Of a DNA stretch of 64,000 nucleotides, positions 2,250-45,441 are shown piece by piece. Position 1 is the first letter of the stretch, and each line of letters begins with the position of its first letter. A program made the position numbers and the translations under genes. Where the stretch lies: NCBI GenBank assembly GCA_965112735.1, contig OZ218963.1, positions 2,170,001 to 2,234,000 on the forward strand. The letters run 5' to 3'. The stretch comes from Phaeosaccion multiseriatum. Taxonomy: Eukaryota; Protista; Ochrophyta, other classes. The notes under the pieces were generated by a model that did no database searches, had not been told where the DNA came from, and was given only the letters and a program-made list of their open reading frames with translations.

Positions 2250-5469
<3,220 letters not shown>

Positions 5470-14440: not shown

Positions 14441-15891
14441 ATGGGAGGTGTTGCAAGCTCGGTGTGTGGCCATGGCGGATCGGGGGAGGACGAATTTCTG
14501 TGGGAGGAAAAGAAGAAGATCTTCGAGGATCGACTTGCCTTCTTCGGAGGATGGACTGTACGCGATGCCGAGCGCCTCCTCGAAAGGTGAGGTTGTGATA
14601 ATATGTGGATATAGTTAGGGCCAGAAGGTATCGGGGTCAAGGGCCACAGGCCTGCTACACAACCTATTTTTTTTTTGTCAACCTCCTCCCTCTCTCTTCC
14701 TGTTGACGCTCTCTTGCTGATTGGATGGGAGGGCCGCAGGTATCGTCTGCTTGGGAAATTTGAAGCCACTCAGGACGTCTCGGCTCAGGCAATGGCAGCG
14801 GCAAGCAGGGAGAATGACTCCAGCGAAGGTAGACGCTGCGGAGACAGAGAGAGGGGAAGAGGATGGGGTTAGTGATGTGGGTGGGGTGGCCTCAGGGGAG
14901 ATCCCTCTGATAGCATGCGGATAGAATGCGGCGGCTTTAGGTAGCTCTTGCTTGTATCGCTCTTGTTCGTTCTACTGCGCTGATACCTCGCTCTCCCTCT
15001 GTCTGCCTGATGTACAAAAGAGCGTCTGAGGAGTCGCGCGGGTGGGCTGGAGTCGGGCTGGGAAGTGGGCGAGCTTCTCCCCCAGGTAAGGAACGGGTAA
15101 AGGGCTTCGGGAGAGGGGGCAGGGAACATGAATCACGTTGAATGGAACGACTCACATCCTCTCGCCCCATCCGTTCCTGCCCCATTCCCCCCCACCCCAA
15201 AGGAGTTTTCCTTCGTCAAGACAGACTGGAGTCAGTTCTTCTCTCTGGTTCTGGAGGTGGAAGAGGAGCGCAAGCAGGAGAAAAGGGAGGCTGCAAGATG
15301 GCACGACTCCACCAGAGGATTCGCTATGCATGCAGATCAGGTCAGACCACTCACTTACTCACTCACTTCTCACTCCCTCCCTCCCTCCCTCCCTCCCTCC
15401 CTCCCTCCCTCACTCACTCACTCACTCACTCACTCACTCACTCACTCACTCACTCACTCACTCACTCACTCACTCACCCACTCACTCACCAAGGAGGAAT
15501 GAGGGACTGACGGTGATCTGTGGTGGGGTGTGCCTGCTCAATCAATTTTTAATAAATATTTGGACGTCTCGGCAAGGCGTATCACATCTCCTCTCGCCGG
15601 ATGTTGTGCTCCGTGTGTGTTGCTGATGTGTACACCCACCCCCACGCTCTTTGAAAAGAAGTGGATCTCACCGCTTCTTCTGTACCAAAGGAAACAAAGG
15701 TCGGCTCATTCAATCAATCAATACGCTTTGTGAATTGATGCATACCCTTGCCGTTCGTTCCTTCCCATCCGACGAAAGGTCAAGCGTGTGGAGATGGAGC
15801 AGTGGATGCACGGCACTGGATACAAGCACCAGTGGTATGAGATCGATCGCCACACGGACGATGAGGCCTCTGAAGAAGAGGAAGAGGAGGG

Positions 15892-15933
<42 letters not shown>

Positions 15934-18900
15934 CGGCGATGACGACCAACAGGAGGTAAAGTTGAGGCATGCAGGAGAGACAGACAGCAAAGCACGCAAG
16001 AAGGTGTGGTTGGTTGGGACACGGGAAGCAGACAACGAAGGAAATCATGGCTGATCATGTGTATTGCCGGCTTTGAAATTGACCCCCCCCCCCCCCTACA
16101 TCCGCATCTGTGTGCATCCATACGTGTGATGTCCCTCTACAACAGGCTAGCGCGATGCGGGGGGCTCATTCCAAACGACAGCAGCAGGAGGAGAGAGAGC
16201 GTGAGGCAGAGGCGGAGAAGAGTCAGGCAAGTGAACGCCCCCCAACTGGGGAGTGAGGGAATCGACCTGGGGCGGGGAAGGACGGGCCGCTTCACGTTAC
16301 GCTATAGCTTGATAGTCAGCCACAGAGGAGGAGGATCCCCCCTCGGTATTGAAAGGCAGGATGTAGACCTTTCCCCCTCCGATTTTATACATGCTCAGGG
16401 TGCTGTGGCCCTCTCTTTTGGGCCTCTCGTTCTTTTCGGGCTTCTCAGTACTATTATTGGGCCTCTACAACCCCACACCCCCCACCTTCTCCTCCCTCTC
16501 TCCCATTTCTTCCTTTTTGTCTTTCTCTCTCTCTCTCTGTCTGTCTCTCTCTCTCTTCGTTCTTCGTTCCGTGCGCGCAGTCTTTTCGTCGCCCTCCCCC
16601 ATCCTGTGATCCTTCCTGTGTGTCCCCGGTTTTCTTCGGGTATTCCTTCATCAAAGAGAAGCAAGTCAAGGAGCGAGCGCAGAGGGAGGCCCGGGAGAAG
16701 CAAGACCGCGAGAGCCAGGTGCGTGGGTGCGTGGGTGCGTGGGTGCGTAGCGTGGCGTGCGGCTCGTCCTCTTCCCGGCGGGGAATGGCAGAAGGAAGGG
16801 GTTTTGCTTGGTTGCTTGCTTTGTTGTGTCGGATTTTTTTTGGTCACTAAGTGTGACCTTCCTCCTCTCTCCGCCCCTCCCTCCCTCCCTCCCCCCGACG
16901 ACTCTATTGCCGCACACACAGGTGGTCCGCACGGTTAGGGCCCGTATCAAGGCTAAGCTCGAAAAGCTTAAAGTGTGAGTGCGTGTGATTCTGAATCTTG
17001 AGTGTTAAGAGTGAGCGTTTCTTTTCTCTCCGTACTCCATGCCTCCATCTCTTCTACCTCTCCTCCGTGCCCATTCTCACCAACCTCTTCCACGCGTAGT
17101 TCTTAGGTTGATTCCTGTAATATATTTCCCCCTTCCACCCTACCTCACCTGCCCTTCCACCCCCTCCTTGCTCTGTGCATCCTCAGAGACGCCGGTGCCC
17201 GTCGAGAGGCCCGACGCTCGAAGCTGGAGCAGACCAGGAACGAGCAACGCGTAGCCAAGGCCAGGAGGAAACAGGACCTTGACATGGCGAGAAAGGTCAG
17301 GCAGGAGGTGGCAGATGATGGAAGATGGTGGCAGATGGCATGGCAGATGGTGGTTGGCACGGGATACACGGGATACAGCCGCGGCCCTCTGAATTTAGAG
17401 GAGTATGGGTATTTGAGAGGGATCACTGCCTGGGCATAGTGAGAATGCCTCAATGCAGGGGCATGCAGGCAGACCTTCATAGCGGGGTAGCGGCGGGCAG
17501 CACATTGCAAGCCCTCACAACTGTCCTCAGAGAAAGAATGTGTGGTGTGCAGCTTACAGCTATCTATCCATCTATCCATCCATCTATCTGTCTTTCTATC
17601 TATCTATCTATCATCTATCTATCATCTATCTATCTATCTATCGTGCTTAACATCCATGTCGTCCTACGCTCACAGTCTATGTTGTCGATCCTGCTGAACA
17701 TTTCTTTCTGTCCATCTGTCTATCGTGCGGAACATGTCTGTCGTACCGTGGTCTCAGGTGATGCCTCCCAGCGAGTTTCGTGACGTGGAGCGCCAGTGGG
17801 AGGCAGACGAGGCGGCAGTGAAGCTTGCTCAGAGGTATACCATACCACCCCTTTCTCAGCCTCAGCAGTCCCCCATCTCTCTCTCTGCCTTTCAACTCCT
17901 CTCGACACTCTCCATATCGGCTTATCAGCTGCCCTTCCCCCTCGCTCTGCCCTTTTGCCTGCACCCCCTCACTATCGCCTCAACCCCTCCTCTGAGCGCT
18001 TCACTCTTCTCAAGTCTCGTCTTCTCCCCTACTCTCACGCCTCCTTCGCTCGGCCTCTTTCTACCTGCGTATTGCATTGCAGTAATACAAAGTTCAGAAC
18101 CACATCCCACTCCCCTTGCTTACTCATTCCCTCTCTCCCCTCGCTCCCCTCCCCACTCTCTTGTTCCAAACATTGTCTCTCTCTCTCCTCGCTCCCCTGC
18201 CCCTCCCCTCCATTCGCTCGCCTGCGGCACTGCTATGGAAGGGCCGAGCTGGTAGAGCGTAAGAAGAAGTTCGCACACCTCAACCGAGAGGACACCGACG
18301 AAGTCAACGCCTTCGAGCAAGCAGTAGACGAGTGGGATCGAGTAGGTAGGATGGGGTGAGGTTGGATGGGTTGCGATAGGTGGTGAACATCTCACAATGC
18401 AGCCCTGAACATCGACAGCTTAAACGGAGAGGGACAGAGTTTGAGAGTCGTCATTGTGTTGGAATCGAAGGCTCCTCTCCTCTCCTCTCCTCTCCTCTCC
18501 TCTCCTCTTCATGGCGACTATGTCCTCGATCCTCTTTCTCTTTGTTTGTGCATGTGGCTCTCTCTTCCTCCCAATTCTTCTCTCCTCCTCATTGTGCAAC
18601 CTCGTCGCTTCGTCTTTCTCTTTTGCTTTGTCGTCGGACAGAGAGCACCTCCGGGCCACGGGGGGCGGATTTGGAGCGCATTTCGCGCCAAATGGTGTGG
18701 ACAGTAGTGGAGGCGATGGCTGTGGCGGGGGACGAGCTCGAGGACACACAGGCACAGGTGCGGTGCGTGGGTGCGTGCGTGGGTGCGTGCGTGGGTGGCT
18801 GCGTGCGTGAGTGTGTGCGGGGGCGGGGCAGGGAAACGGGGCAGGGGCGAGAGGGGGAGGGAGGGTAAGGGAACAAACCTTTCTTCGAAGGGGAGGGGCG

Positions 18901-20395
18901 TTTGAAGGACATCGAAGAGGCGAGGCGGGGCCTCTGTAATAAGTATTAATAAGTAACCAAGCTCTGCTCTGTCAAGTCCATCTCCTCATCGCTATCGTGT
19001 TTGTCGCTCACCCAACAATGCCTCCCTCTCTCTCTCTCTCCCCTCTCTCTCTCTCTCTCTCTCTCTCCCTCTCTCTCTCTCGTGTAGTTGGTGGCCGGCC
19101 AGGAGGAGATGAGAAGAGAGGCAGGGGCAGGGGGGGGGGGCGTGCAAGTCAAGTCTGCCATCAATGCCTTGGAGGGACAAGTCCGAGCCAAGGAGAGAAA
19201 GGTAAGCGCTGAGTAGGTGGAGGGAGGGAGGGAGGGAGAGAGTATAGCTAGTACTCCCCTGTCTTGGCAATAGCCTCCCTGTGTACCCAGTTCTGCGTCC
19301 CTACTGCTTTCACATCTTGTCTCTTCGGTGCCCCGTACGCCTTTAAATGCTCCCATCAGCTTTAACTGACAGTCTGACACTACATCCGGCCCGATCCTTC
19401 CTACTCCCTACATACTGACCAAACCCTAATTTCACCCCTGATTCTCCACCACATACATACATACATACATACATACATACACATACACATACACACATAC
19501 ATACATGCATACATACATACATGCATACATACATACATACATACATACATACATACTTCACACGTACGTACATACATATATATACGTATGCTCACTTCCT
19601 TTTGCATGAATGGCCCGATCTTTTGTTTGCAGCTGGAAGACCTCCTGATAGAGCTGGGGGAGGCAGAGGTCCTGTTGCTGCGCGCGGAGAAGATTCGCGC
19701 AGAGGAGGACCTGATCATACCCCTCTATGCTCCGCTGGCGGCGGGTATGAGGGGCCAGGCGAGAGGGGCGGACCTTCCACCGTCAAGTGAGGGAGGAAGG
19801 AGGAGAGAGGGAAGAGGGGACAAGTGCGAGAGGAGAGAGCAAAGAGGGGATTTGCAGGAGGCGATGGTAGTAGTAGTAGTAGTTGTGGTGGTGGTGTTGA
19901 TGATGCTGCTGGTGGTGGTGGTGGTGGTGGTGGTGGTATTGTTGATGTTGCTGTTGCTGTTCTTATTCTTGTTTCTCTTCTCGGTCTCCTCGTTCTCATT
20001 CTCCGTCTCGTCCTGTGTGTCGTTCATGATACCCCCCCCCCCCAACGCACACAGGTCCTCCTGGTCCAGGGGCCTTCACCGCTCCCTTATTCGACTTGTT
20101 AACTGCTGTCGGAACGGTGGCGGAGGACCGAATGTGGGAGAAGCTCAGCTTCCTCATGACGCTCTTCGACGTCAACGACAACAAGTTTATGGATAAGGAG
20201 GAGGTGAGAGAGAAGGAAGGAAAGGGAAGGGAAGGGACGGGGGGAGGCAAGGGGGGGCTCTCCTGTTTTTTCGAGACAGATAGGTAGATAGGTAGACAGA
20301 CAGACAGATAAGACAGAAAGATGGGTAGATAGATGGATATATAGACAGATAGACAGACAGACGGATAATACAGATCGACAGATAGATAGACAGCC

Positions 20396-20450
<55 letters not shown>

Positions 20451-22424
20451 AAATACAGATAAACAGATATACACGTAGAACCTCTCAGCAGAACAGTACC
20501 AAACACGGCACAACCGCCTATCCCTGCCTGTCTGCATACTGTTGCTGAACTGTTGTTGTATTGTTGTTGTTTGAATCCTCTCTCGACATGCTGTTATGTC
20601 CACCCCCCCCTTCCCTGCCCCTGCTGTCCCGAATGAACCCTTTTCCGTAACCGTAGCCTCTTTTGTTCGTTCCTCTCTGCCCTCCCTTCCTGCTCTATCT
20701 AAAAAAGATTTGCATCCAAATGGAGACACTTGCTCGTGTGCTGACCCTGCTGGGGATGGTAGATATGCCCACTTCCTACGAGGAGGTGGAGAGCGTGGTG
20801 CTGAGAGCTTTCATGGAGCACCGCCTCGACCATCGGAAGGTACGAGGGAAGAGGGGAGGTGGGAGGATGCGTAGTAGGATGAGTAGTAGGATAGAGGGAG
20901 ATGGAGAGTGGATCGAAGCATGAGTAGCAAGTAGGATGAGTCATGTCGTTTTTGTCGTGATGTACATACCCCCAAAGTCTAGTCTGGTGGTGTGCATATA
21001 ACCAAGAGAAAATGTTTTGTTTTCGGTTTGCTTGTTTGTCTGCCCCGCCCTCCTAATTCCACCTCTGTGTCGCCTCCTTCCTCCTTCCTGCCTTACGTTT
21101 TTGTAGGGCATGACAACCTTTGAGCTTCGCAAGTGGCTTGCCACCATTGCCTCCCGAAGCCGTCCGCTTAGTGAAGTGTTCGGCGCTGACTGGAGCTACG
21201 GCCAAATGAGTACGGTCATGCGCTTGGCCATGGGGCCAGTGCATCAGATGGAGATGGGGTGAGTCATACTCATCTATACAGTGGCATTGATTGCACTTGG
21301 GGAGAGGCGTATGGGCAGGCGTGTGGGTAGGTATATGGGTAGGCATATGGGCGCGCATATAGGCGTATGGGCAGGTGGGGCCGGTGTATGAGATGGAAAT
21401 GGGGTGAGAGCTCTAGTCATGTCATACGAGTTATGTGGCATTCATGGCATTTTAGCAGGATTTTGGGTAGGAATATGGGTAGGCATGTAGGCAGGCACGT
21501 AGGCAAGGCGTGTGGGCGGACGCATAGGTAGGTGTATGGGTAGATGGGACATCGATTGCACGTGGGCAGGCAAATGACGGGGGGGGAGGGGGGCGAGGCG
21601 GCGAAGCTTCCATCCAAGGCGAGGATAGGCTGACGAGGGGAGCATAAGGAGGAAAGGAGTTTGAATATGTGTGTGTGGGGCCTTGTTGGAACTGCTGCAT
21701 TGATGGATGTGGTTGTTACGCCCCTGGGCAGGCATATGGGCAGGCACACATGTCGCCCCGCGCGCTTTGCTGGGCAACCCTCCTGCCCCCCCCGCTTGAG
21801 TCTTTTACACACACCCACCCACTCGGCTGAATACCAACATACCCGAATGAATCCGCACCGAATGCCACAGGATGATATCTATGGTCGATCTTAAGTATAT
21901 GGCCGCGCGAGACGCCATTGCCTTCAAACCGCAGCTGAAGAGCGAGGAGAAACAGCTGGTGAGGGGGAGAGGAAGGGAGAGAGGGAGAGAGGGAAAAAAA
22001 TGGTGGGAGGGGGAGGGAGAGGAAGGGGAAGGAGGGAATGAGATCGTAGGAGGGAGTGGGAGATGAAGGGGGAAGAAGGAGAGAGATCGTGGGAGTGAGC
22101 GAGGGAAACTCTAGATGAGTCTTGCCTTTTTGGAGAAGAGAGAAGGAAAACTTTCCATTCTGGTGCGCTTCTGCTTCGCTCCTCTATGCCCCGTTGTTAC
22201 GACTCAAATTTCGACTTTTAACAATTGATACTCACTTGCTTCACCCCCGGCCCCCTTCCTCCTCCTCCCTGCTCCTGCCGCAGATACACGATCGAGCGAT
22301 GTCACTGGGCGATGATGACCCCCTCAAGGCGGACTACTCCAAGTTCCTGGCCAAGAGGACGAGCACGCTTAACTCAGACTCCATTCCCCTCAAGCACGGA
22401 AACCTGGAGAACTATTGTACATGG

Positions 22425-22465
<41 letters not shown>

Positions 22466-23830: not shown

Positions 23831-23863
<33 letters not shown>

Positions 23864-32276: not shown

Positions 32277-32328
<52 letters not shown>

Positions 32329-35300: not shown

Positions 35301-38300
35301 AGTCGGTCAGTCAATCAGTCAGTCAGTCAGTCAGTCAGTCGGATAGACAGACAGATACTCAGTCAGTCAGACAGTCAGTCAGTCAGTCAGACAGACAGAC
35401 AGACAGACAGACAGTCAGTCAGTCAGTCAGTCAGTCAGTCGCAAAGGAAGAGATCAGTGATCCCCCTCCTCTCCTCTAAATGTCTTCCTCTCTACTCGCC
35501 TCTGCTGCTCCCACTGCTCCAGGGTGGTATGGCCATGTCTGGCTACTATCGCGAAACCGTCAAGCTGGAGAGGAACGGCCCGATCCTCAACGACCTTCTG
35601 AACAGAGCTGCCCGGTAAGGAAGGAAGGGCACAGGACGCGGAAGACAGTAGAAGGCAGTAGAAGGCAGCAGACGTTTTGCCTCTAAAGAGAGAGACGAAA
35701 TAGGGGCTTCGAAGCCGGAGAATACGATGACATACATACCAACACACACACCCTCACCCCCAAGTTGTCCTACAGTAGTAAGTACCGGACGCGCCCACCC
35801 CTCACACACCAATCCTCTGTCCTGCAACGTCGTCTCCCCTCTCCCTCCCCCCCCCCTCCTCCGTTCCAGCTTCAATCCCGACCTGAAGTCTCGAGTAGAC
35901 CTCAAGGCCAAGGGAGAGGTCAAGAAGCTGGAGCTGCAGAAGGGTCAGGTGGGTTTCCGAGTCGCCGAGGCGACATGACGCCAAAACAAAGGGGCATTCT
36001 TTTCCCTGTTTGATCTCATCTTTCTGCCCCTACCTCATCCTTGCTTTCCTCGTTCGTCCTCTCCCTCTCTCTCGCCTGGGCAGATGGAGCCCGCCGACGC
36101 ATGTCTGAGCTCGAAGGGTAAGCAAGCTGTTGACTCCGCTGCGCCAGAGGGAGAGGGAGGGAGAGGGAGGGAGGGCAAGGGGGTGTACGGGGCAGCGGAA
36201 GGAGGCCCTGGGCCTGTCGCATTTCCAAGAGAAAGGCTTTGCTGCTGCTGGTCTTTCACTCTCACTCTTACTCCCTCTCCTTCCCTCTCTCCCGGTCCCT
36301 CTCTCTTCGCCTCCCTCCCCTCCGCTTTGTCTCTCCATATGTATCCATGCATCTCGCTCTATCTCTCCAATGCTCTGGTCGCGGTTGTGTCTTACCCCGC
36401 CCACCCCCGCCTTTTCCGCTTTTCCACTTCCTCTCTTTCTCCTCTACAGCAAACCTGAGCGCAGCTGCCCCATTCGGCATTGAGGCGTGGGCGAAGGTAA
36501 CGGGAGCACGGGACACGAACAGAACCGTCGCAATGACAGGACGATACAGCCTCTCCGCGAGCAGGTGCAGTCGCAGTTAGGCGATACACCAGTTAGTGAT
36601 ACGGCAGTTTCACACACTTGTTGCTTCCATTGTACCCTCTGCAACCACGCATGGGATTTCGATGTCATCCCTCACCCCCAATACACACACACAAACACAA
36701 ATCCCCCCCCCCCTGCCAGAGAGAATCGCTGGACGTTGTCACTGAGTACCCGTGAGGGCATCGAGCTGGCCGTGGCCGGGCCCGTGCTGGAGATGGAGCA
36801 GTGGGTGCACCTTGTTGGTGTGTGCGACGGCACCACAGCCACGCTCTTTGTAGACAGCAAAGTGTGCGCAGAGGTGTGTGTGTGAGAGAGAGAGGGAGTG
36901 TGTCCGGTTCAGCTGAAGTGAAGTGGGGCGCCTCGGTACATAGGAGCTGGGACAGTTGAAGGAAGGTGGCATAACGCAAAGATGCCTTTGCTTGAAGGAA
37001 TGGTCTGACGTGCTTGGAATGAATCAACGCTGTCCTTGCTGTTGCGTGTTGTGCGCTCTGTGATGATGATTGCGTAGGTGGACGTCGAAGGGGAAACGCG
37101 GCGTCGGGCAGTAGAGCGTAGGGAGGAGCGCCAGGCGAAGCTGGATGAGCTCGACGTTTCTGAAACCGCCGATAGGGAGGCGCTAAGGAGCAGCACCGAG
37201 CAGAAGTGCACAGCCTTCTTCAAGACCAAGGAGGGCAAAGCATGGCTGGGGAAGGCGTCGAACAAAGCCATTCAGAAGGCGGAGATGGAGGTGCGTTTAA
37301 GACGGAGGGAGGGAGGGAGGGAGGGAGGGAGGGAGGGGGGTGTCGCTCTCTTGATGTACTGCTCACGGCATCGTATGAGTATGAACATGCCTTGCCTGGT
37401 AACAAGCAACCGTATCACCAACACCCTCACGACGTCCTCGCTCGTGTGTGTGGGGCAGATAAAGCTGAGGGGTGGAAGTCCTACGCCAGAGGAGATTGTG
37501 GACGGGGACAGGAAGAAGCCGACCAAGGCAGAGGCAAAGGCTCAGGTAGGGAGAGAGAGAGGAGAAAGAGAGGGGAGGAGAGAGAGAGGGGAGGGAGGAG
37601 AATGAAGAGAGAGGAGAGAGGAGAGAGCCAGGGGATGAGAGTGAAGACAAGGCGGAAGAGAGAGAAGGGGGGGAGAGAGAGAAGACTGGCAGAGCAGAGC
37701 AGCATCAGGCGCATGCACTCCCTTTCGCTTAACCTGGAGAAGGCATTTTTTGGCCCCTTTGCATCTCTCCACCGGCTCTCTCATCTTGTAGTTGGAGTAG
37801 TGTGGGAAGGAGGAGGGTATAAAAGGAGTGGCACACTTGTGGTAGTAAGAATGTGGGCGGAGCCTTACGTAGTAGCACGTAGTGGTAGTGTCTCCCTACA
37901 TCTTCGCATCTCCACACCTCCTCTTGTCCCTTTGTCCTTCTCTCTTCCCTTCCCTCCCCTCTCTATATAAGGTTCGAAGAGACTACGTGACGGAGGCGTA
38001 TATGGAGGGATTGGCCAAGCTCACTGCGTCCTTCAAGTCCAAGCGGGACGAGCTCGATGATAGCTTCAATGCGGAGATCGACGAGGTGGGTAGGTTGGTT
38101 GGCTGTTGGTTGGTTGGTTTGCTGGTTTGTCTGACGGTTGGTTGATTAGTTGGTTGGTTGGTTGGTTGGTTTGTCTGACGGTTGATTGAGTGGTTGATTG
38201 GTTGATTGGTTGGTTGGGTGGTTGGTTGGTTGGTTGGTTGATTGGTTGGTTGGTTGGTTCTCTGACTGTGTTGGTTGGATGGTTGGTTGATTGGTTGGCT

Positions 38301-41300
38301 GAGTCGTTTGTGGGTTGTTTTATTGATCGCTTGGTCTCTTGTCTTCTTTCATTTGATAGCGTTCGTCTCTTGTTCCGAAACCCCTTTCTGTTGTTCAATT
38401 CATCTCCTGCATCAACCCCGCCCCCCCTCCCCTCCGGATCACGAGTAGGTTAAGGAGCGCATGGGCAAGCCTCTCTGTGTGGGAGCTGCGTGCAAGTCAA
38501 AGGCCGGCAGCGGCAAGTTCTTTTGTGGGGACATTTGTCACGTAGCTGTCTACACCACCGCCCTCAGTCCCGACGGAGTGAGGAAGCACTACTTGTCAGG
38601 CTGCAAGGTAAGGAAAGTCTGTCGTGTTACTGTCATGTATGCCTCGAGGAGAAGAAGCAAGAAGAGGGAGGTGCAGTGGGCGTCAGCGATGACAATCTCG
38701 AGCTGAGCTGAGCTACTGAGCTGAACCTTCCCACTCCCCATCCTCCTCCTGAGCTACTGATCTGGACCATCCCACTCCCCACCCCCCTCCTACGGCGGAT
38801 AGTCACATCGCCTCTTGTACACTTCTTCGAGTTCATCTCACCCACCCCTCATATGATGCACTTGCCACCTCCACCTCCTTCCCGCGCCCACCCACACACT
38901 CACCCCACACCCTATGTCAGCCTCGCATGGAAGAGACTGATCGCCTCTACGCCCTTGCCAGTGCGAGGTACGAGGCCGCCCTCGCCTTCGCTCCCGACGA
39001 CGATGACATCATCAAGCAGTATGCACGAAGCATCGTGCAGGTATGTATTTAGTCTTGTGTGTATGCATGCATGCATGTATGTATATATGTATGTATGTAT
39101 GCATGTATGTATGCATGTATGTATGTACGTGTGTATGTATGTATGTATGTATGTATGTGTGCATGTGTGTATACTTGTCGTGATGTACGTATGTATGTGT
39201 GTATCTAGGTATTTTTGTGTGCTGCTTGACTGGCCCTGAGGGAAAGCGAAGGGACGCACACGCGCACACACACACGTATACACACACACGTATACACACA
39301 CGCACCGACAAGACATAAGACGTATTACGTAACACCCCTTCTGTCCTCCCCCCCCTCTTCACTCCCTCCCTCCTTCTGTCACTGACTGTCTGCCTGCCTT
39401 TCCTGTGTGACTGTGGCGCTGAAACCTGCGCAGTATCTGGAGCTGGAGTCCTCTCAGGGCGTCAATCCCAAGCGTTCGGCCAAGAAGGTCATGGATTCCG
39501 TCCAACGCTTTCTACGCTTCAAGGTAACAATTGGGGGCTCTCTGCTCGCTCTTGTCGCTTTCGCTCGTTACTTTCATCCCTTCTCACTAATACAACCACC
39601 CCTTGCTATCCTCATCGTCCATCGACCCCCCCCCCCCGTATCCTCGCCCTCTCCCTCTCCCTTTCCTCGCCCTCTCCCTCTCCCTCTCTTCTCCCTCTCC
39701 CTCTCCCTCTCTCTCCACCCCCCCTCTCCCTCTCCCTCCCTCTCCCTCTCCCTCTCCGTCTCCCTCCTCAGAGCTGGGACGGGCTTGCTGAGGTGTTCAG
39801 TCAGCTTCCCTCAAGCCCCGTGTACGCACACGCCTTCTGCACGTTCTTCAGAGCGGCCATCGACGCAAGCCCAAACTACTTTGCAACTTCGAGGTGGGTG
39901 CTGCTGCCAAGGGGAAAGAGAGAGAAGGAGAGAAAGAGAGGGTGGGTGAATTCAAGGGTAGAGAGAGAGAACGAGTGAGAGAGGGAGAGGGAGAGGGAAA
40001 GGAGATAGAGAGAGAGAGAGGTTGCTTGCACGGATAAGGACACACACACACATACACAGTGAGAGGCAGAAAGAAGAAGCTTTCCCATCTCCGCCCTCCC
40101 CTGCCCGTCCCTCACTGTGCCCCTCGAGTTTCTTGTCCCCCCTCCACCTCCATGTGCTTGCATCCCCCCCCTCCCTGCGCCCCGCCACGCTGACCTTCGC
40201 TCCCTCCTTCCCTCCCTCCCCTCCCCTCCCTCCCTCCCAGATACCTACCCCTGGCCAGTCTAGCGCACATGCCTCGCAAGTTCTACCTGCACATGCCCGA
40301 GGCGTCTTGCCTCATGACGGACGTGGCTGCGGAGGTGTTCCGGCTTGTGCTGACCGAGCTCGAGCTCGCACATCACTTCGGAGGGATTGACCTTTCCTGG
40401 CTGCCTCAGGTCAGATCGTTCGTTCGTTTGTTGGTTAGTTGGTTAGTTGGTTGACTGGCTGGCTGGTTGGTTAGTTGGGTTGCTGTTGGTTTGGTTGGTT
40501 CGGTTGGCTCGTTCCCTTCGTTGCTTCCTTCCTTCCTTCCTTCCTCCGGTCCTTGCTCTTTCTCCGGCCAAGGACGAGGTGGGGCCATCCTGACCCCTAC
40601 TCTCTTCTCGTGCTCTCCCCTCTCTCTCTCTACCTCTACCCCTACAGGTGAAAAGCAACAGCATGGTGGTGTCCATGGTCCTTCAAGCAGAGGAGGACGA
40701 GGTGAGTGAGGAAAAGGGTGAGAGGGTGAGGGGGAGGCAGTAGCGACTCACAGCACCACAACGGGTCCAACGTGGTCCCACACAGGATGTCCATCATCAC
40801 CTTTATGCCTTACGATCGTCGCCTTTTAACAAGTCGTCGTGAAAGGGCCTCTTGAGCTGCTTTTCCCTGTTGCTGCGTTTGTCATGCCTTTCTGCTCCTC
40901 TTGCCGTGTACCACACCACCGCTGCTCCCATTCTAACCCTCACTCCACCCCACCCCCCACTCTACTCTGGGCTTGTACTGCCCGTCCCCCCTCCTCTCCC
41001 TCCCCCCTCTCTCCATCCCTCTCTCCCCTTCTCTCTCTCTCTCTCTCTCTCTTCCTGCCTAACTTGCCTGTTTTGTCCGTCTTAATCATTCTTACGCAAA
41101 GGATGGTCGTGTGATTGACCTCAGCAAGCATCACCTCGACTGCTCAGACGTAACCGACGCCGACATCCGCGTCGTTGTAGACCACCGCCGCCTCGCTTCT
41201 GTGCTCAATGTGGAGGGCTGTCCCCTTGTAACGGATGAGTCGCTGGTCTACGTGGGGAGGGTGCTGCGCCATCTGCAGGTATATCGGTGCATTACGGGTG

Positions 41301-43238
41301 GCGGTGGTGATGAGGAGGGCAAGAAGGAGGCTAGTGGGAAGGGGGTATGTATGTGGAGGTTTCAGCAGGGGGACAAGGGGAGAGGCCGACGGTATCCTTT
41401 CATCCATTCTCCCCTCTCTTTCTCTTGTTCACGCGTCATCTTCCTGCCTGTCTGTCTTTCTCTCTCTCTCGCCTTTCACTGTCTCTCTCTGCTTCTCTGC
41501 TTCTCCCGCTCCCCCACCTCCTCTGCCTTTCACTTCGTCTTCCCTCTTCTCACCCCCCCCTCCCTGTATCACCAACTGCTGCATCACCGCAGGTGCTTGT
41601 CCTTGACTCGTGTACCCTCGTCACTGACCGAGGCCTCTCTCTGGCCCTCAAGGGGTGCCCGGAGCTGCGAGTGCTCGGCCTAGCAAGCTGCTTCGCTCTC
41701 TCCCCAGAGCTTCTAGTGCAGGCCCCCGTCAAGTGCAACAGGCTGGTGACCGTCAATCTCAGCCACAATCCCGCAGTCTCAGACGGCGCCGTCGCTGCCC
41801 TAGCCGCACAGGTGGGCACATAGACAGCACGACTGATGGGATGATGGTGGTAGTGGTGTTGGTGGTGTTGGGTGTTGGAGGAGGCAGTGAGTGGTGCTGG
41901 TGATGGTGAAGGTGGTGGTGTTGGTGTGGGTGACAAGGGTGTGGAAGGCGAAGACACTAGGTCTCGGCCATTTGAAGACTTGTGTGCCCTGACGGGAGAG
42001 CGATCCCCATTCAGGACACACTCAGGACACACTCAGGACACTCAGGACGTGAATTGATTGCAAGAGAGGGTGCTGGCATATCACCATGTCAGGCGTCGCC
42101 TTGAGCTTCTCTCTCATCTCTCCCATGTCCCTAATCAAGCATCTTCTCCTTCCTCCTTCTCTCTCTCGAACTCTATCCGCTCTCTCTCTCTTGCTCTCTC
42201 TCTTCCCTCTCTCCCTCTTCCTCTCTTCCTCTACTCTCTCTCCATCTCCCCCTCCCTCTCCCTCTATTACTCTTCCTCCCCCCCCCCCTGTCTCTCTCTC
42301 ACTCCCTCTCCCTCGCTCCGCATGGTGATATATACCCCCAGTGCCGCTCCCTCGCGTCACTGCACCTGCGTTATTGCGTGTATGTGACCGACGTGGGTCT
42401 GCATGCGTTGGCGGTCGATTGTAACCAGGTAATTTTATGTAGTCTTTTACATGTAATATGTGTATGTATATACATTATATACATGTATGCTGCCTTCTTT
42501 TCTCCCTGTGTGATTCATTGTTTCCGTTTCGTCCGTCTTTTCGTTTTTCTCCCTCTCTCTCTCTCAAGGCAACATTGACTTCGCTGGACGTGAGTGGATG
42601 CCCGCTCTTGAGCGACCACAGCATTGTCCCTCTCGGCGAATTGTGCACCAAACTCGAGGTGCGGACGGGGGTTTGGATGGGGCGGGGTGGGTGTGGGGGG
42701 GGGGAGGGGGGAGGAGTATGCGGTTGAGCCACCGCACGGCCTGTCCTGCCCTTCCCGTCCTGTCCTTCCCGTCCTGTCCTCCCCGTCGTCGCCAGTCATT
42801 GATTGATGTACCCTGGACTGGACGGAAAGGCTTTATCCATCAGCTCCTCTGCTCATTTCATTGGTGTTGGGGTGTCGAAGGATCTAAGAAACTGCAACTG
42901 CAACTGCAACTGCAATTGCACCTGCAACTTGAAAACTGCCGACTTGAAACAAACTCCTAGGTGCTGAATCTGAAGGCAGTGAATCGCCTCACAGAGGTGG
43001 GGGCAACAACCATCACGCACAACTGCTGGGGCATCCGCAGCTTCAACATTGAAGATTGCTACAATGTCGTGGACCACAGTTTCCTATACGACAGCCAGGA
43101 AGACGGCAGGAGGGCAGTTGATCAGCACATGCTGGTGAGAGCATGATGGAGGGATGGAGCGGAAGGGCAGGCTGGGGAAGAGAGAGGAAGCAAAGAGGGG
43201 AGGGAGGGTGCGCGTGCGTGCAGGTGTGCGTGCGGGTA

Positions 43239-43270
<32 letters not shown>

Positions 43271-45441
43271 TGTGTCGCGAAAGGGAGTGAGTAGAGGGCC
43301 TTCCATGGAGAAAGAACTCGCCCCCGTCACTTTTCCCACCCCCCTCACTCCCCACCACCCGTTCCTCTCCTCCCTCCACACACAATAACACCAGGAGAAT
43401 CTGACGGACCTGAACCTCAGTGACTGCCACAAGCTCACTGAGCGCACAGTGGACGCCGTCGCCAAGCGAAGCCCCCACCTGCGGTCCTTGAACGTGTCGG
43501 GGTGCTGCAACATTGGAGATGCTGCGTGTGGCTTCCTCGTGTTGGATAGGAAGAGTGGACAGCGGCGGTGTCAGCAGCTGGAGGAGGTACGGCAAGTTGA
43601 ATGAACGAGTGAATGATGGAGGAGGGAAGGGCTCCTCTGTACCCCCCTTTAACCCCCCCCTCCGCCGCTGCTGTGCTGTTCCCCTCAGCTCAATGTGGCC
43701 TATTGCCTCAGCATCAGCGACGTGGGTATCTCTAGCCTTGCCTCAGAGCTCAAGGTGCTAAAAAAAGTGGACCTCAGCGGCTGCGTGCAGGTACGCTTTC
43801 GGGCAACACGGATGTTTCCGTTTCAGTTCCAGTTTACTCACGGAAAGTGGAGGATGGGTACAAGGTATCGATGCGCTACCAGAGCTGACTAACACTTTTC
43901 GAAGACATGTGAAGGGAGAACAGGGAGAGACGTTTGCGTCCATCCACTGCCATCCGTGCGCCACACAGAGGCCAAGAACGCGACCTTGACCTTGACCTTA
44001 GCGAAAGCGAAGAGCTGAAACTGCAACTGGCTTGCCGGGCTTGCCAGCTTTGCCCGTTGCTTTGCCTTGCGTATGATGCAGCGCGGAATGTGACGGATCT
44101 CTAGCTTATGGGCCTCTCCCTCGCTCTCTTTCTCCCTCTCTCTGTCACTGTCTCTGTCTCCCTCCCTCCCTCCCTCTCTCTCTGTGTGTTTGTGGCCTGT
44201 TCTTTGCCTTGGCTGGCCCTATTCTGCTTTGTGCTCTCAGGTGACGGACGAAGGCATCAGGACGCTGTGCAGAGGCTGCCTGCAGATCAGCAGCCTCAAC
44301 TTGAGTCAGTGTAAGAAGCTCACTGACATCACCATGTGCCACCTCACTGAGTATCTGTGGTAAGTCAGGAAGAGAGAGAGGGGGGGGGGAGGAGAGACAT
44401 ATGGGAGAGAGAGAGGGAGACGGAGGGAGAGAGAGGAGAGAGGGAGTGAGAGTGACTTGAGTGAGTGAGAGTGAGAGAGAGAGTAGTCCCAAAGCCCAGG
44501 GCAAGGGCGAGGGTGAGTAGAGACGGGCATTGCCGAGACGACACATTGCCACGCATCTCCCCCATCCTTCCTTCCGCTGGCAGACACACTTGTAACGCTT
44601 GTAACGCTTTTTTTGCAGAGGGAAAGGGTTCGTCCCCCACGTGTTGGCCATGCTCCTCTTCCCCTTTTCCCGTCACTTCATGTCCTTACCCCCTGCCCCC
44701 CCACCCCCCCCCAAATATACATTCTCTTTGTTGTCGTCCGCTTGTTTGCTCACTCCAGGGTGGAGGAGCTGAACATCAGTCAGAACACGCGCTTCACAGA
44801 TGACGGCGTCGAGGTGCTGTCTGTAGAGTTTGAGGGGTTGCGGACGCTCAACTTGTCACGCTGTCTACGCCTCACAGACCGGTCTCTCGACGTACTGGGG
44901 AGGTACTGTCCCAATCTGAGGGTGAGTGAGTGAGGGAGTGAGTGAGGGGGATGAGGGGGGAGGACAGGAGGAGGGAGGGAGGGCCGTGGGGTGAGTGAGT
45001 GTCGGTCAAAGACGAGAGATATAAGCAAGGCAAGGCAAAGCAAAGCGGGTGGAGTCTTCTCTTTGGTTCAGTCGGACCGGTCTCACGGACAGGACCTTCT
45101 CGCTTCACGCCTCCAAACAACTCAACAGCCTCTCTATGGCCTGCCCATGCAACGACGACGTCGTACACACAACATGCAGACAGCCGGGACACAGTCGACC
45201 ACCGTTGTTGCCCTACGCACGCCGCTCCTTCCTCTACACACACACACACACAATGCTACGCACGCTGCTCCTCCTCCCCTCCTCCTCACCCCCCTGACCC
45301 CCCCAAAATGTACGTGCCCCTCCGTCCCTCCATCCCTCGCCAACCACACAGGAGCTGTCTATGACTGACGTTCCGCTGGTCACGGAGGACGGCAAGAAGC
45401 GAATGATGAAGACCATCCGGGCGCTTGACTTGGGGGGATAA
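14441..45441 (+). CDS. Giant multi-exon protein: MGxxxS/Cys N-terminus, EF-hand, IQ, coiled coils, CLU domain, split LamG, TPR-like helices, C-terminal LRRs
   Basis: ATG 14441 ([10 protein letters not shown]...); dozens of short GT-AG exons on +; stop TAA at 45439-45441 (..IRALDLGG*). Motifs: [22 protein letters not shown] (EF-hand); [15 protein letters not shown] (IQ); [18 protein letters not shown] / [27 protein letters not shown] / LRPEFVK..PLSPDA / [14 protein letters not shown] / EMVARTVKN (CLU); FGIEAWAK / [15 protein letters not shown] / [25 protein letters not shown] (LamG); LxxLxLxxCxxlTD repeats. The junctions I checked are in phase, but not all were checked, so a split into two genes cannot be excluded. 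Confidence 0.72.
20168..20203 (+). other. EF-hand Ca2+-binding loop ([12 protein letters not shown]) within the giant gene
   Basis: D1, N3, N5, D9, E12 pattern preceded by [10 protein letters not shown], as in calcineurin-B/NCS-type EF-hands. Confidence 0.75.
22782..22826 (+). other. IQ calmodulin-binding motif ([15 protein letters not shown]) within the giant gene
   Basis: Matches [IL]QxxxRGxxxR. Confidence 0.75.
22889..23130 (+). repeat. Intronic 31-bp minisatellite, about 8 copies
   Basis: Unit approx. TGGCCTGGTCTGTCCTGACACCTCTGATGGA, with a variant containing TTGACGGTCTCGTCTGTCC; head-to-tail with no spacers. Confidence 0.9.
27058..27645 (+). repeat. Intronic (TCAC)-rich region containing a ~315-bp imperfect tandem duplication
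   Basis: CCCTGACTTA(C/T)TGAACCACTCACTGACTCTCT...GCTGACCTACTCCCT...CACCTACGGTTGATCTACTCAC occurs at ~27069 and again at ~27386. Confidence 0.85.
30388..30981 (+). repeat. Intronic (GGTAT/GGTA)n satellite, ~600 bp
   Basis: Continuous GGTAGGTATGGTAT mix beginning exactly at the GT donor after ...GATGATG (30387). Confidence 0.95.
33238..33395 (+). repeat. Intronic degenerate minisatellite (GGCAAGCGTATATAGCGTT core, 5 copies)
   Basis: Repeated AGGCAAGCGTATATAG(C/G)GTT, alternating with GTGTATCGTTCCTTAGAT. Confidence 0.85.
35212..35440 (+). repeat. Intronic (GTCA)n/(GACA)n microsatellite
   Basis: Directly visible; starts at the GTCAGT donor-like site. Confidence 0.9.
38086..38300 (+). repeat. 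Intronic (GGTT)n microsatellite
   Basis: Directly visible just after the GTGGGT donor. Confidence 0.9.
41102..45441 (+). other. Leucine-rich repeat array (cysteine-containing, FBXL/AMN1 type) at the C-terminus of the giant gene
   Basis: More than a dozen repeats, e.g. [78 protein letters not shown]. Confidence 0.9.

What the first reader, a model, noticed from the sequence alone, without database searches (positions are those of the whole stretch)
14441..45441. 31-kb gene encoding a putative membrane-anchored, Ca2+-regulated CLU-LamG-LRR giant protein
Seen: one collinear series of + strand exons encoding, in order, an MGxxxS/Cys N-terminus, long charged helices, an EF-hand, an IQ motif, a CLU domain, a LamG fold, TPR-like helices and more than a dozen Cys-type LRRs. 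Known: canonical Clu1/CLUH is CLU + TPR and binds mRNAs for mitochondrial proteins; it lacks EF-hand, IQ, LamG and LRR modules. Inference: this is a non-canonical CLU-family scaffold that may link Ca2+/calmodulin input at a membrane to ligand recognition (LamG/LRR) and RNA or organelle positioning. It is the best candidate for an undescribed system in the window, although related CLU+LRR hypothetical proteins may already exist in protist databases.
Basis: partly seen in the sequence, partly recalled or inferred. Interest (0 to 1): 0.75.

Follow-up and report, generated by a model that had tools for sequence, protein, structure and literature searches.

The report
Giant lipid-anchored CLU-LamG-LRR scaffold gene
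This is one real 31-kb, roughly 60-exon gene for a protein of about 3,000 residues; the same architecture is conserved across stramenopiles (algae, water moulds, labyrinthulids), is in the databases only as "hypothetical protein", and has no described function.

Summary
ATG 14441 (in-frame stop 12 nt upstream) to TAA 45439-45441 bounds one + strand gene.

Modules, in order:
- MGGVASS N-terminus (N-myristoylation consensus)
- acidic and charged helices
- NCS-like EF-hand module with one canonical loop
- IQ motif
- CLU domain
- CLU-central domain
- LamG domain split by a charged insert of about 130 aa
- helical region
- about 17 FBXL-type Cys LRRs

Full-length relatives are collinear with the window, 32-63% of their residues aligning with no order inversion. 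They come from Aureococcus, Triparma, Phytophthora, Pythium, Saprolegnia, Albugo and Hondaea. Most start MGxxx[S/T]. One relative encodes all modules in a single uninterrupted 9.15-kb ORF, so this is one gene.

The family is already in databases, unnamed or misnamed (F-box protein, calmodulin). I found no paper on it, and this scan's notes hold no earlier finding of it.

The closest solved structure to the family's CLU domain is Toxoplasma CGP (Z 17.1), a giant scaffold of the preconoidal ring.

Function is inferred, not shown: a lipid-tethered, calmodulin/Ca2+-responsive docking scaffold. The RNA and flagellar ideas have no support. The IQ motif is family-wide. The Ca2+ loop is canonical here but degenerate in Phytophthora and three other relatives.

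The joined spliced protein was neither searched nor folded; all searches were exon by exon.

The parts
14441..14586 (+). Exon 1: start codon and MGGVASS N-myristoylation-type N-terminus, followed by a conserved motif (F-F-x-x-W-x-x-x-D/V). In-frame TAA lies 12 nt upstream.
   Evidence: Relatives start MGVASS, MGAELS, MGTALS, MGNRLT, MGQDVS, MGSAYS, MGVGVS, MGAEVS.
15203..15340 (+). Conserved N-terminal motif exon (W...WH..G-F/Y-AM).
   Evidence: tblastn to P0039 residues 78-119 and P0099 residues 76-127, both E 5e-5.
15779..16003 (+). Acidic exon (IDRHTDDE followed by a poly-D/E run).
   Evidence: matches the HEIDGHTDD acidic stretch of oomycete and other relatives (E down to 1e-7). These matches are composition-biased.
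16581..16718 (+). SPVFFGY motif exon and the start of the charged helices. The 5' boundary is approximate.
   Evidence: hit by ten of the N-terminal queries (P0039 E 7e-7).
17187..19744 (+). Group of charged-helix exons: about 17187-17295, 17772-17834, 18242-18345, 18642-18757, 19088-19201 and 19633-19744.
   Evidence: Own splice and coding model. Homology covers 18641-18760 and 19630-19755. The other exons rest on coding score only.
20070..21258 (+). NCS-like EF-hand module in three exons (20070-20203, 20708-20839, 21107-21258). The canonical loop is at 20168-20203; the second loop is degenerate.
   Evidence: The family profile matches NCS-1, KChIP and recoverin at E about 2e-6. Pfam EF-hand_6 scores E 0.008 in the Aureococcus orthologue.
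21871..22426 (+). Two conserved linker exons ([12 protein letters not shown] ... PLKHGNL).
   Evidence: up to 19 homologues support 22281-22427.
22760..22870 (+). IQ-motif exon ([12 protein letters not shown]).
   Evidence: Pfam IQ E 0.002. The motif is conserved in all nine aligned relatives that cover the region.
23414..28072 (+). Charged and helical linker exons, including 23414-23510, 23974-24052, 24181-24340, 24492-24596, 24947-25043, 25244-25447, 25785-25895, 26139-26249, 26474-26663, 26966-27042 and 28006-28072.
   Evidence: Homology covers most of them; 24492-24596, 24947-25043, 26474-26663 and 26966-27042 rest on coding score only.
28480..31863 (+). CLU domain in seven exons: 28480-28683, 28991-29086, 29258-29369, 29827-29958, 30310-30395, 31279-31390 and 31713-31863.
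   Evidence: Up to 42 homologues support the first exon. Consecutive query residues in P0010 (639-935) show that the exons are adjacent in the mRNA.
32080..34848 (+). CLU-central (eIF3_p135) and following helical exons: 32080-32179, 32476-32609, 32963-33059, 33696-33817, 34115-34278 and 34684-34848.
   Evidence: Pfam eIF3_p135 E 0.0011 on 33694-33816. Homology.
35141..36873 (+). N-terminal two thirds of the LamG (Laminin_G_3) domain: 35141-35211, 35523-35614, 36450-36564 and 36720-36873.
   Evidence: Pfam Laminin_G_3 E 8.5e-5, profile 53-102. Homology.
37078..38085 (+). Charged helical insert of about 130 aa inside the LamG domain (37078-37290, 37492-37545, 37972-38085).
   Evidence: Relatives carry the same insert: about 174 aa separate the YDGT and FF.G motifs in P0039 and P0044.
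38449..38607 (+). Last strands of the LamG domain ([12 protein letters not shown]).
   Evidence: Pfam Laminin_G_3 profile 118-150, E 0.023. P0010 tblastn E 5e-6.
38921..40409 (+). Helical, weakly TPR-like region (38921-39040, 39772-39894, 40241-40409).
   Evidence: TPR_14 E 0.031. Homology.
41102..44921 (+). FBXL-type Cys-containing LRR exons: 41102-41278, 41593-41811, 42342-42420, 42569-42658, 42961-43134, 43395-43586, 43689-43790, 44241-44359 and 44759-44921.
   Evidence: LRR_6 E 4.6e-7. Motif scan. The family profile matches FBXL2 at E 2.4e-67. No F-box was found in relatives.
45352..45441 (+). Terminal exon: last LRR and the TAA stop (45439-45441).
   Evidence: GTGAGT donor after 44921, pyrimidine-rich acceptor before 45352. 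The sequence fits the LRR register. No homologue support, because C-termini vary between relatives.

Best explanation
Window 14441-45441 (+) is a single gene of about 60 exons. It is the orthologue, in this stramenopile alga, of a protein family of about 2,700-3,400 aa conserved across stramenopiles.

The protein is most likely a cytosolic scaffold tethered to a membrane by N-myristoylation. Its conserved IQ helix would bind calmodulin or a calmodulin-like light chain. In this lineage one canonical EF-hand loop may add direct Ca2+ sensing.

The most conserved part is the CLU domain, a protein-kinase-like fold that has probably lost catalysis. Together with CLU-central it would serve as a rigid docking core, as it does in Toxoplasma CGP. 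The LamG domain, with its coiled insert, and the FBXL-type LRR solenoid (without an F-box) would recruit partner proteins.

Shown here:
- gene structure
- domain content and order
- orthology
- conservation of the MG start and of the IQ motif
- structural similarity of the CLU domain to CGP

Inferred only: lipidation, calmodulin and Ca2+ control, the scaffold role and cellular location.
For: One gene:
- Full-length relatives align collinearly on the + strand from 16.6 to 44.9 kb, with 33-47 HSPs each, no order inversions, and 32-63% of their residues covered.
- With a more sensitive search the N-terminal exons at 15.2-16.0 kb also align in order.
- P0039 encodes every module from MGVASS to the C-terminus in one uninterrupted 9,153-nt ORF. 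P0042 and P0041 are likewise single ORFs.

Domains:
- Pfam on relatives gives CLU at 1e-26 to 5e-41, plus eIF3_p135, Laminin_G_3 and LRR_6.
- The window's own exons give hits to the same families.

Anchor and calmodulin:
- MGxxx[S/T] is present in the window and in nine relatives that start with MG.
- The IQ consensus is present in all nine aligned relatives that cover the region.
- The EF module matches NCS-1 and recoverin-family proteins at E about 2e-6.

Docking core:
- Nearly all invariant alignment columns lie in the CLU domain.
- The AF2 model of the family's CLU region (CLU core mostly pLDDT above 90) matches CGP residues 3259-3830 at Z 17.1, rmsd 4.2 A, 265 residues aligned. The next hits are kinase-like folds at Z 5.9 or below.
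- CGP and PCR10 form the structural core of the preconoidal P2 ring (PMC12819142).
- The human CLUH central domain is classed as kinase-like with altered catalytic residues (PMC10041065).
- In the giant-family members the Asp of the 'LD' motif seen in the other two CLU proteins aligned (L001, P0048) is mostly N, H, R, K or G.

Copy number: a search of the whole genome with the family's CLU region (P0011) found only the window and one C2 paralogue.
Against: - There are no transcript data for this alga. Several exon boundaries come from my own crude splice model, and some linker exons have no homology support.
- Myristoylation, calmodulin binding and Ca2+ binding are predicted from motifs only.
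- The EF loop is degenerate in Phytophthora and in three other relatives, so Ca2+ sensing cannot be the family's core function.
- The similarity to CGP may simply reflect that CGP and PCR10 are the only CLU-type proteins with solved structures. By sequence the family is far closer to the Pfam CLU model than to CGP, which shares only one 73-residue stretch with the family profile at E 1.3e-5.
- The structural model is of a relative's fragment (P0011), not of the window's own protein.
Confidence: 0.6

Rival explanations
1. It keeps the canonical CLU job. The protein would be an mRNA- or ribosome-associated factor that positions organelles or localises translation (as Clu1, CLUH and FRIENDLY do), here pinned to an organelle or plasma membrane and gated by Ca2+/calmodulin.
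For: CLU and CLU-central domains are clearly present. By sequence the family is much closer to the Pfam CLU model, which I take to be built mainly from canonical CLU proteins, than to CGP.
Against: - CLU_N/GSKIP and the C-terminal TPR array of canonical CLU proteins were not found.
- The genome has other CLU genes on C2 and C4, and one of them could be the canonical one.
- No RNA-binding module is detectable.
- The added LamG and LRR modules are protein-binding types.
Confidence: 0.2
2. It is a cortical cytoskeletal organiser related in role to apicomplexan CGP. The giant CLU scaffold would sit under the plasma membrane and assemble actin, myosin or calmodulin-like components.
For: - CGP is the top structural match at Z 17.1.
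- CGP is a giant protein listed as plasma-membrane-peripheral. Its ring also contains calmodulin-like proteins, a myosin and a formin (PMC12819142, PMC12663574).
- A second CLU+LRR family ends in an actin-binding villin headpiece (P0048).
Against: - Apart from one CLU-central stretch there is no sequence similarity to CGP.
- CGP shows no LamG or LRR match to the family profile.
- As far as I know stramenopiles have no conoid (own knowledge).
- PDB sampling bias may explain the match.
Confidence: 0.15
3. It is an F-box/LRR substrate receptor of an SCF ubiquitin ligase, as several database names suggest (EIN3-binding F-box protein 1, F-box/LRR-repeat protein 2 or 13).
For: The LRR region matches FBXL2, FBXL17, TIR1 and SKP2 strongly (E 2.4e-67 to 1e-13).
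Against: No F-box was found by Pfam in five full-length relatives at E up to 0.01-0.1. The match to FBXL2 begins at residue 51, which I take to be after its F-box (F-box position from own knowledge). The database names look like transfers from the LRR alone.
Confidence: 0.04
4. The locus holds two or more adjacent genes (an EF-hand/IQ gene and a CLU-LamG-LRR gene), or a decayed pseudogene.
For: There is no RNA evidence for this alga. Homology is thinner between 14.4 and 20 kb.
Against: The complete module order occurs in a single uninterrupted ORF in a relative and in annotated proteins of many species. A frame-consistent exon path without stops exists from 14441 to 45441. Coding GC3 is 0.72 in the 27 hand-picked exon segments used to train the model, two of which belong to the neighbouring S1 gene.
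Confidence: 0.03

Closest known systems
Uncharacterised stramenopile 'Clu domain-containing proteins', e.g. Aureococcus anophagefferens KAK7254419.1 (2,709 aa), Triparma columacea TrCOL_g2906 (2,843 aa), Phytophthora pseudosyringae PHYPSEUDO_001636, Saprolegnia diclina SDRG_14482 and the Hondaea fermentalgiana 3,397-aa protein
   Same: Same module order over the whole length. They share the MG start (the Aureococcus models start differently), the IQ motif, CLU, CLU-central, the LamG with insert, and FBXL-type LRRs. They are collinear with the window at about 35-40% identity.
   Different: They are only database entries, named hypothetical or misnamed. The oomycete checked (Phytophthora lilii) has a degenerate EF loop. 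Three relatives (P0039, P0041, P0042) are encoded as one uninterrupted ORF, whereas this gene has about 60 exons with microsatellite-rich introns.
Canonical CLU proteins (yeast Clu1/TIF31, Dictyostelium CluA, Drosophila Clueless, human CLUH, plant FRIENDLY/REC)
   Same: CLU domain followed by CLU-central (eIF3_p135). The CLU domain has a kinase-like fold with altered catalytic residues (PMC10041065).
   Different: No CLU_N/GSKIP and no clear TPR array were found. This protein adds an N-myristoylation motif, an EF-hand module, an IQ motif, LamG and LRRs, and by my recollection of canonical sizes is two to three times larger.
Toxoplasma gondii CGP (TGME49_240380, 4,956 aa) and PCR10, core of the preconoidal P2 ring (PDB 9ya0)
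   Same: Giant protein with a CLU-type domain. It is the best structural match (Z 17.1, 265 residues aligned) and has a Clu-central stretch (E 1.3e-5). CGP is listed as plasma-membrane-peripheral, in a ring that also contains calmodulin-like proteins.
   Different: No detectable similarity outside CLU and CLU-central. CGP shows no LamG or LRR match. It belongs to a different lineage and a different cell structure. Orthology is not shown.
Dictyostelium CldA/CldB with LrrB (PMC2906285)
   Same: Non-canonical Clu-domain proteins that work together with a leucine-rich-repeat protein. Here CLU and LRR are on one polypeptide.
   Different: In Dictyostelium the link is an SH2-phosphotyrosine interaction between separate proteins. 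The LRR types and other domains differ.
CLU-LRR-villin-headpiece proteins (P0048, P0049; uncharacterised environmental sequences)
   Same: CLU and CLU-central are fused to C-terminal LRRs.
   Different: No LamG, EF-hand or IQ hit in P0048. They end in an actin-binding VHP domain, and their CLU keeps the 'LD' Asp.
FBXL2-type F-box/LRR proteins and neuronal calcium sensor (NCS) proteins
   Same: The LRR solenoid matches FBXL2 at E 2.4e-67. The EF module matches NCS-1 residues 68-171 at E 2e-6.
   Different: There is no F-box. The EF module lies several hundred residues from the myristoylation motif and has only one canonical loop.

Membership tests
Stramenopile giant CLU-LamG-LRR family (database 'Clu domain-containing protein', about 2,700-3,400 aa) | Collinear homology over the whole length | tested here: met
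   33-47 + strand HSPs per relative, no order inversions, spanning 16.6-44.9 kb. N-terminal exons at 15.2-16.0 kb also align in order.
Stramenopile giant CLU-LamG-LRR family (database 'Clu domain-containing protein', about 2,700-3,400 aa) | MGxxx[S/T] N-terminus | tested here: met
   MGGVASS at 14441. Nine relatives start the same way.
Stramenopile giant CLU-LamG-LRR family (database 'Clu domain-containing protein', about 2,700-3,400 aa) | Conserved IQ-type motif upstream of CLU | tested here: met
   Pfam IQ E 0.002. Family alignment.
Stramenopile giant CLU-LamG-LRR family (database 'Clu domain-containing protein', about 2,700-3,400 aa) | LamG split by a long charged insert, followed by FBXL-type LRRs | tested here: met
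Canonical CLU family (Clu1/CLUH/FRIENDLY) | CLU domain (PF13236) | tested here: met
   Three exons give collinear weak hits. Relatives score 1e-26 to 5e-41.
Canonical CLU family (Clu1/CLUH/FRIENDLY) | CLU-central / eIF3_p135 (PF12807) | tested here: met
   Exon 33694-33816, E 0.0011. Also found in relatives.
Canonical CLU family (Clu1/CLUH/FRIENDLY) | N-terminal CLU_N/GSKIP domains | tested here: not met
   No such Pfam hit in P0023, P0039, P0043, P0044 or P0099 at E up to 0.01-0.1. The window's N-terminal exon gave no hit either.
Canonical CLU family (Clu1/CLUH/FRIENDLY) | C-terminal TPR array | tested here: inconclusive
   Only TPR_14 at E 0.031 on one exon. No TPR family was listed for the relatives.
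Canonical CLU family (Clu1/CLUH/FRIENDLY) | Binds mRNAs for mitochondrial proteins / controls organelle distribution | not testable with these tools
   Needs experiments.
Apicomplexan CGP/PCR10 preconoidal-ring scaffolds | CLU-type domain superposable on CGP, plus Clu-central | tested here: met
   Z 17.1, rmsd 4.2 A, 265 residues aligned, for the model of family member P0011. Profile hit to CGP 3732-3807 at E 1.3e-5. The window's own protein was not modelled.
Apicomplexan CGP/PCR10 preconoidal-ring scaffolds | Homology over the rest of the protein (orthology) | tested here: not met
   Only one stretch of the 2,673-position family profile matches CGP.
Apicomplexan CGP/PCR10 preconoidal-ring scaffolds | Location in an apical ring; needed for gliding initiation | not testable with these tools
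   Described in PMC12819142 and PMC12663574 for Toxoplasma only.
F-box/LRR (FBXL) substrate receptors | Cys-containing LRR solenoid | tested here: met
   FBXL2 E 2.4e-67. LRR_6 E 4.6e-7 in the window.
F-box/LRR (FBXL) substrate receptors | F-box that binds Skp1 | tested here: not met
   No F-box family among the Pfam hits of five full-length relatives.
Neuronal calcium sensor / recoverin family | EF-hand module of the NCS type | tested here: met
   Family profile positions 384-489 match NCS-1 residues 68-171 at E 2e-6, and also KChIP, hippocalcin, GCAP and recoverin.
Neuronal calcium sensor / recoverin family | Small protein of about 200 aa with the myristoyl group next to the EF domain (Ca2+-myristoyl switch) | tested here: not met
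   The EF module lies several hundred residues after the MG start, inside a protein of about 3,000 aa.
Neuronal calcium sensor / recoverin family | Two or three functional Ca2+ loops | tested here: inconclusive
   One canonical loop (20168-20203). The next loop is degenerate. The loop is lost in Phytophthora and in three other relatives.

The most novel reading that the evidence does not exclude
Giant CLU-domain proteins would be an ancient class of membrane-proximal organisers in the stramenopile-alveolate lineage. Under this reading the N-myristoylated, calmodulin-binding CLU-LamG-LRR protein is the stramenopile counterpart of apicomplexan CGP. It would nucleate a cortical platform that controls actin or other cytoskeletal activity in response to Ca2+.
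Probability: 0.12. Interest if true: 0.8.

Novelty: new variant of a known kind. Interest (0 to 1): 0.5.

Why it matters
A protein of about 3,000 aa kept as a recognisable gene from labyrinthulids and water moulds to photosynthetic algae is likely to do something basic. Yet no paper I could find describes it, and databases misname it as an F-box protein or calmodulin.

The analysis gives three concrete handles:
- a conserved lipid-anchor motif
- a conserved calmodulin-type IQ motif
- a structural link to Toxoplasma CGP, an essential scaffold of the invasion machinery

Orthologues exist in Phytophthora, which I understand to be genetically tractable. Localisation and knock-out tests there would be ordinary experiments. 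They could show whether CLU domains act generally as docking cores of large cortical assemblies rather than only in mitochondrial mRNA biology.

Tried and rejected
- The six-frame Pfam CLU search of the whole genome found no hit in the window. This proved a false negative, because each CLU exon is too short and too divergent.
- Pfam on the long stop-free stretch 28688-29827, which holds two CLU exons plus intron-encoded junk, gave nothing.
- Pfam did not see an EF-hand in single exons. The EF module was recognised only through the family profile and by inspecting the loop.
- My first self-trained exon finder overfitted into micro-exons. A stricter version and a homology-weighted version (which over-extends some exons) were used only as guides.
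- phmmer of the CLU fragment P0011 against PDB sequences found nothing.
- Two genome searches with the 2,843-aa Triparma protein failed with tool errors. The shorter P0011 worked.
- Literature searches for the architecture, for 'Clu domain-containing protein' in oomycetes, and for six locus tags found no paper on the family.
- The F-box reading was rejected because no F-box is present.
- Nested or antisense genes were rejected.
- Palmitoylation as a family trait was rejected because the Cys is not conserved.
- The window's own protein is not in the representative library: the best hit to the CLU exon was 55% identical.
- The spliced, joined protein was deliberately not searched or folded.

Full report
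**What the window is.** The window is G000:C14:2170001-2234000 of a 67-Mb, 22-contig eukaryotic genome. GC is about 0.55. The exon segments used to train my coding model have GC3 of about 0.72. Introns are GT-AG with the donor pattern AG|GT(G/A)AG and are full of tetranucleotide microsatellites. Other agents' notes call the organism a stramenopile alga (unchecked). The relatives found here fit that.

**Checking the observation.**
- The + strand between 14441 and 45441 holds many short coding segments whose translations look like real protein.
- The first segment starts at ATG 14441 with [13 protein letters not shown] lies in frame 12 nt upstream, and a GTGAGG donor follows 14586.
- An EF-hand loop, [12 protein letters not shown], lies at 20168-20203.
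- Pfam finds an IQ motif at 22776-22829 (E 0.002) and Laminin_G_3 at 36720-36873 (E 8.5e-5).
- Pfam finds LRR_6 above its cut-off at 43395-43586 (E 4.6e-7), with weaker LRR hits on neighbouring exons and a weak TPR_14 at 38921-39040.
- The last exon (45352-45441) has a clean pyrimidine-rich acceptor, continues the LRR register and ends in TAA at 45439-45441.

**The CLU domain.** This was the doubtful item, because a six-frame Pfam CLU scan of the whole genome hit loci on C2 and C4 but not this window.
- tblastn with the genome's own C2 CLU open frame (L001, CLU E 6e-57) gave six or more weak hits. All are on the + strand and in query order: 28480-28587, 29006-29110, 29847-29957, 30330-30395 and 31278-31346.
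- Their collinear chain scores 164 bits, against 112 +/- 14.5 (maximum 155) for 100 shuffled queries.
- Exon-by-exon Pfam then gave CLU on three exons in profile order (28-60, 110-134, 147-182). It also gave eIF3_p135 (CLU-central) on 33694-33816 (E 0.0011) and the last part of Laminin_G_3 (profile 118-150) on 38449-38607.
- The two LamG hits are separated by exons 37078-38085, which encode about 130 charged, helical residues. The LamG domain therefore carries a long insert.

**Relatives.** A search of 1.84 billion representative proteins with the 68-aa CLU exon 28480-28683 found 22 proteins, at most 55% identical.
- The long ones carry CLU + eIF3_p135 + Laminin_G_3 (P0009), and the same plus LRR_6 (P0010).
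- P0010 clusters with Aureococcus anophagefferens KAK7254419.1 (2,709 aa, 'hypothetical protein'; UniRef name 'Calmodulin'). Its Pfam hits are CLU, eIF3_p135, Laminin_G_3 and LRR_6, plus a weak EF-hand.
- Further word-seeded searches found the same architecture in many Phytophthora species. It also occurs in Nothophytophthora, Globisporangium, Pythium, Lagenidium, Saprolegnia, Achlya, Aphanomyces and Albugo, in the labyrinthulid Hondaea, in Ectocarpus (a partial protein), in Triparma, and in unnamed environmental sequences.
- Source names are 'hypothetical', 'Clu domain-containing protein', or transfers such as 'EIN3-binding F-box protein 1', 'F-box/LRR-repeat protein 13' and 'Leucine Rich repeat'.

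**One gene.**
- Every relative maps on the + strand only, in strict order, from 16.6 to 44.9 kb. Each gives 33-47 HSPs, shows no inversions, and has 32-63% of its residues covered.
- Consecutive query residues across neighbouring exons (for example P0010 639-935 over the seven CLU exons) show that these exons are adjacent in the mRNA.
- A sensitive search places the N-terminal 750 residues of relatives, in order, on exons at 15203-15340, 15779-16003, 16581-16718, 18641-18760, 19633-19755, 20070-20209, 20729-20839 and 21107-21259.
- P0018 runs in one protein from MGTALS through the EF-hand and IQ into CLU.
- P0039 is a single uninterrupted 9,153-nt ORF from MGVASS to the C-terminus, with all modules.
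- P0042 (2,729 aa) and P0041 (2,226 aa) are also uninterrupted ORFs.
- A frame-consistent exon path without stops exists in the window from 14441 to 45441. This is weak evidence on its own, because filler exons can fix the phase.
- No credible minus-strand coding lies inside the locus.
- With P0011 as query, the only other CLU locus detected in the genome is the C2 paralogue.

**Conserved features that bear on mechanism.**
- N-terminus. The window and nine relatives begin MG-x-x-x-[S/T] (MGVASS, MGAELS, MGAEIS, MGQDVS, MGSAYS, MGVGVS, MGAEVS, MGTALS, MGNRLT). This is the N-myristoylation consensus (established knowledge). The Cys at position 9 is not conserved.
- IQ motif. An IQ-type motif ([ILMV]Q-x3-R-[GSA]-x3/4-R) is present in all nine aligned relatives that cover the region.
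- EF module. The family profile matches neuronal calcium sensor proteins (NCS-1 residues 68-171, E 2e-6; also KChIP, hippocalcin, GCAP, recoverin and calaxin). The Ca2+ loop is canonical in the window and in P0039, P0023, P0018 and P0040. It is degenerate in Phytophthora lilii, P0044, P0042 and P0045.
- CLU domain. Nearly all invariant columns of the ten-protein alignment lie in this domain.
- LRR region. It matches FBXL2 (E 2.4e-67), FBXL17, TIR1, Rad7 and SKP2. No F-box appears in five full-length relatives.

**Structure of the CLU domain.**
- An AF2 model of P0011, a 457-aa fragment of this family modelled with a 32-sequence alignment, has mean pLDDT 73.5, and most of the CLU core is above 90.
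- Foldseek's best PDB hits are two chains of 9ya0, the Toxoplasma preconoidal P2 ring, followed by kinase-like folds such as OspG, HipA and WbdD.
- VIA-align gives CGP (chain EA, residues 3259-3830) Z 17.1, rmsd 4.2 A and 265 aligned residues. This is far above the next rows at Z 5.9 or below: mycobacterial ADP-bound kinase-like proteins, OspG, PRPK, APH and SidJ.
- The family profile also hits CGP 3732-3807 by sequence (E 1.3e-5).
[quoted passage not shown] CGP is needed for gliding initiation and ring stability (PMC12819142, PMC12663574).
- Human CLUH's central domain has already been classed as protein-kinase-like with altered catalytic residues (PMC10041065). This agrees with the weak kinase-like hits.
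- In the giant family the Asp of the 'LD' motif seen in L001 and P0048 is usually N, H, R, K or G. That argues against conserved catalysis at this position.
- Caveat: CGP and PCR10 may be the only CLU-type proteins in the PDB, so the match shows a shared fold, not a special kinship.

**Reading.** The gene encodes a lipid-tethered, multivalent scaffold.
- Likely and conserved: an N-myristoyl anchor, a calmodulin or light-chain binding IQ helix, a rigid CLU/CLU-central core, and LamG and LRR partner-binding modules.
- Lineage-specific: direct Ca2+ sensing by one EF loop.
- Precedents exist for CLU proteins outside mitochondrial biology. Dictyostelium CldA and CldB bind the LRR protein LrrB (PMC2906285). 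CGP is a second case. A further uncharacterised family joins CLU, LRRs and a villin headpiece (P0048).
- Nothing here tests RNA binding, organelle positioning or cellular location.
- The proposed flagellar link is not favoured, because Aureococcus has the gene (its lack of flagella is my own knowledge). My capped, word-seeded searches found no diatom or downy-mildew member, but they cannot establish absence.

**Novelty.** The architecture is already in public databases in dozens of species, always unnamed or misnamed. Three literature searches found no description. This scan's notes hold no earlier finding of it. I class it as a new variant of a known kind (the CLU superfamily). The window's gene is an ordinary orthologue of that undescribed family.

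**Limits.**
- Exon boundaries come from my own splice and coding model plus tblastn, and are approximate for several linker exons.
- The joined protein was not assembled for any search or fold, so the window's own protein was never scored as a whole.
- The structural result is for a relative's fragment.

Noticed in passing
window 46143-48013 (+): The next gene downstream encodes an S1 RNA-binding-domain protein (Pfam S1, E 8.8e-14 on 46739-46954). Its predicted N-terminus (about 46182 onwards) has a signal-peptide-like stretch ending [10 protein letters not shown]. This resembles the ASAFAP-type plastid-targeting motif of stramenopiles, which I know only from memory.
   Followed up: partly
window 30385-30981: A 600-bp minisatellite (units of 9, 14 or 23 bp, ATGGTAGGT) starts right at the donor of CLU exon 30310-30395. 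Read in frame it looks like endless GMV repeats and it misled my exon finder. Most other introns of the gene hold tetranucleotide microsatellites (CACT, ACAT, AGAC, CTCA, TGAC, GTCA, GGTT, TGTA).
   Followed up: partly
L001 (G000:C2:3881570-3882217) and G000:C2:1907545-1909389, G000:C4:5009357-5010099: The genome has at least three further CLU loci. The C2:3.88-Mb locus has a complete CLU domain in one 519-aa open frame (E 1.9e-57). In the alignment it resembles the CLU of the CLU-LRR-villin-headpiece proteins (P0048) more than that of the giant family. It keeps the 'LD' Asp that most members of the giant family lack.
   Followed up: partly
P0048, P0049 (environmental proteins, Logan/ENA): A second, uncharacterised architecture fuses CLU and CLU-central to C-terminal LRRs and an actin-binding villin headpiece. 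CLU+LRR fusions are therefore not unique to the family studied here.
   Followed up: partly
Hits: Many Phytophthora, Pythium and Saprolegnia-type species carry the gene, but no downy mildew (Hyaloperonospora, Peronospora, Bremia, Plasmopara) appeared in the list. This could be real loss or fragmented gene models.
   Followed up: no
window 22888-23134: A 31/62-bp tandem repeat (8 or 4 copies, 82-89% matches) lies in the intron just after the IQ exon. Nothing further was done with it.
   Followed up: no
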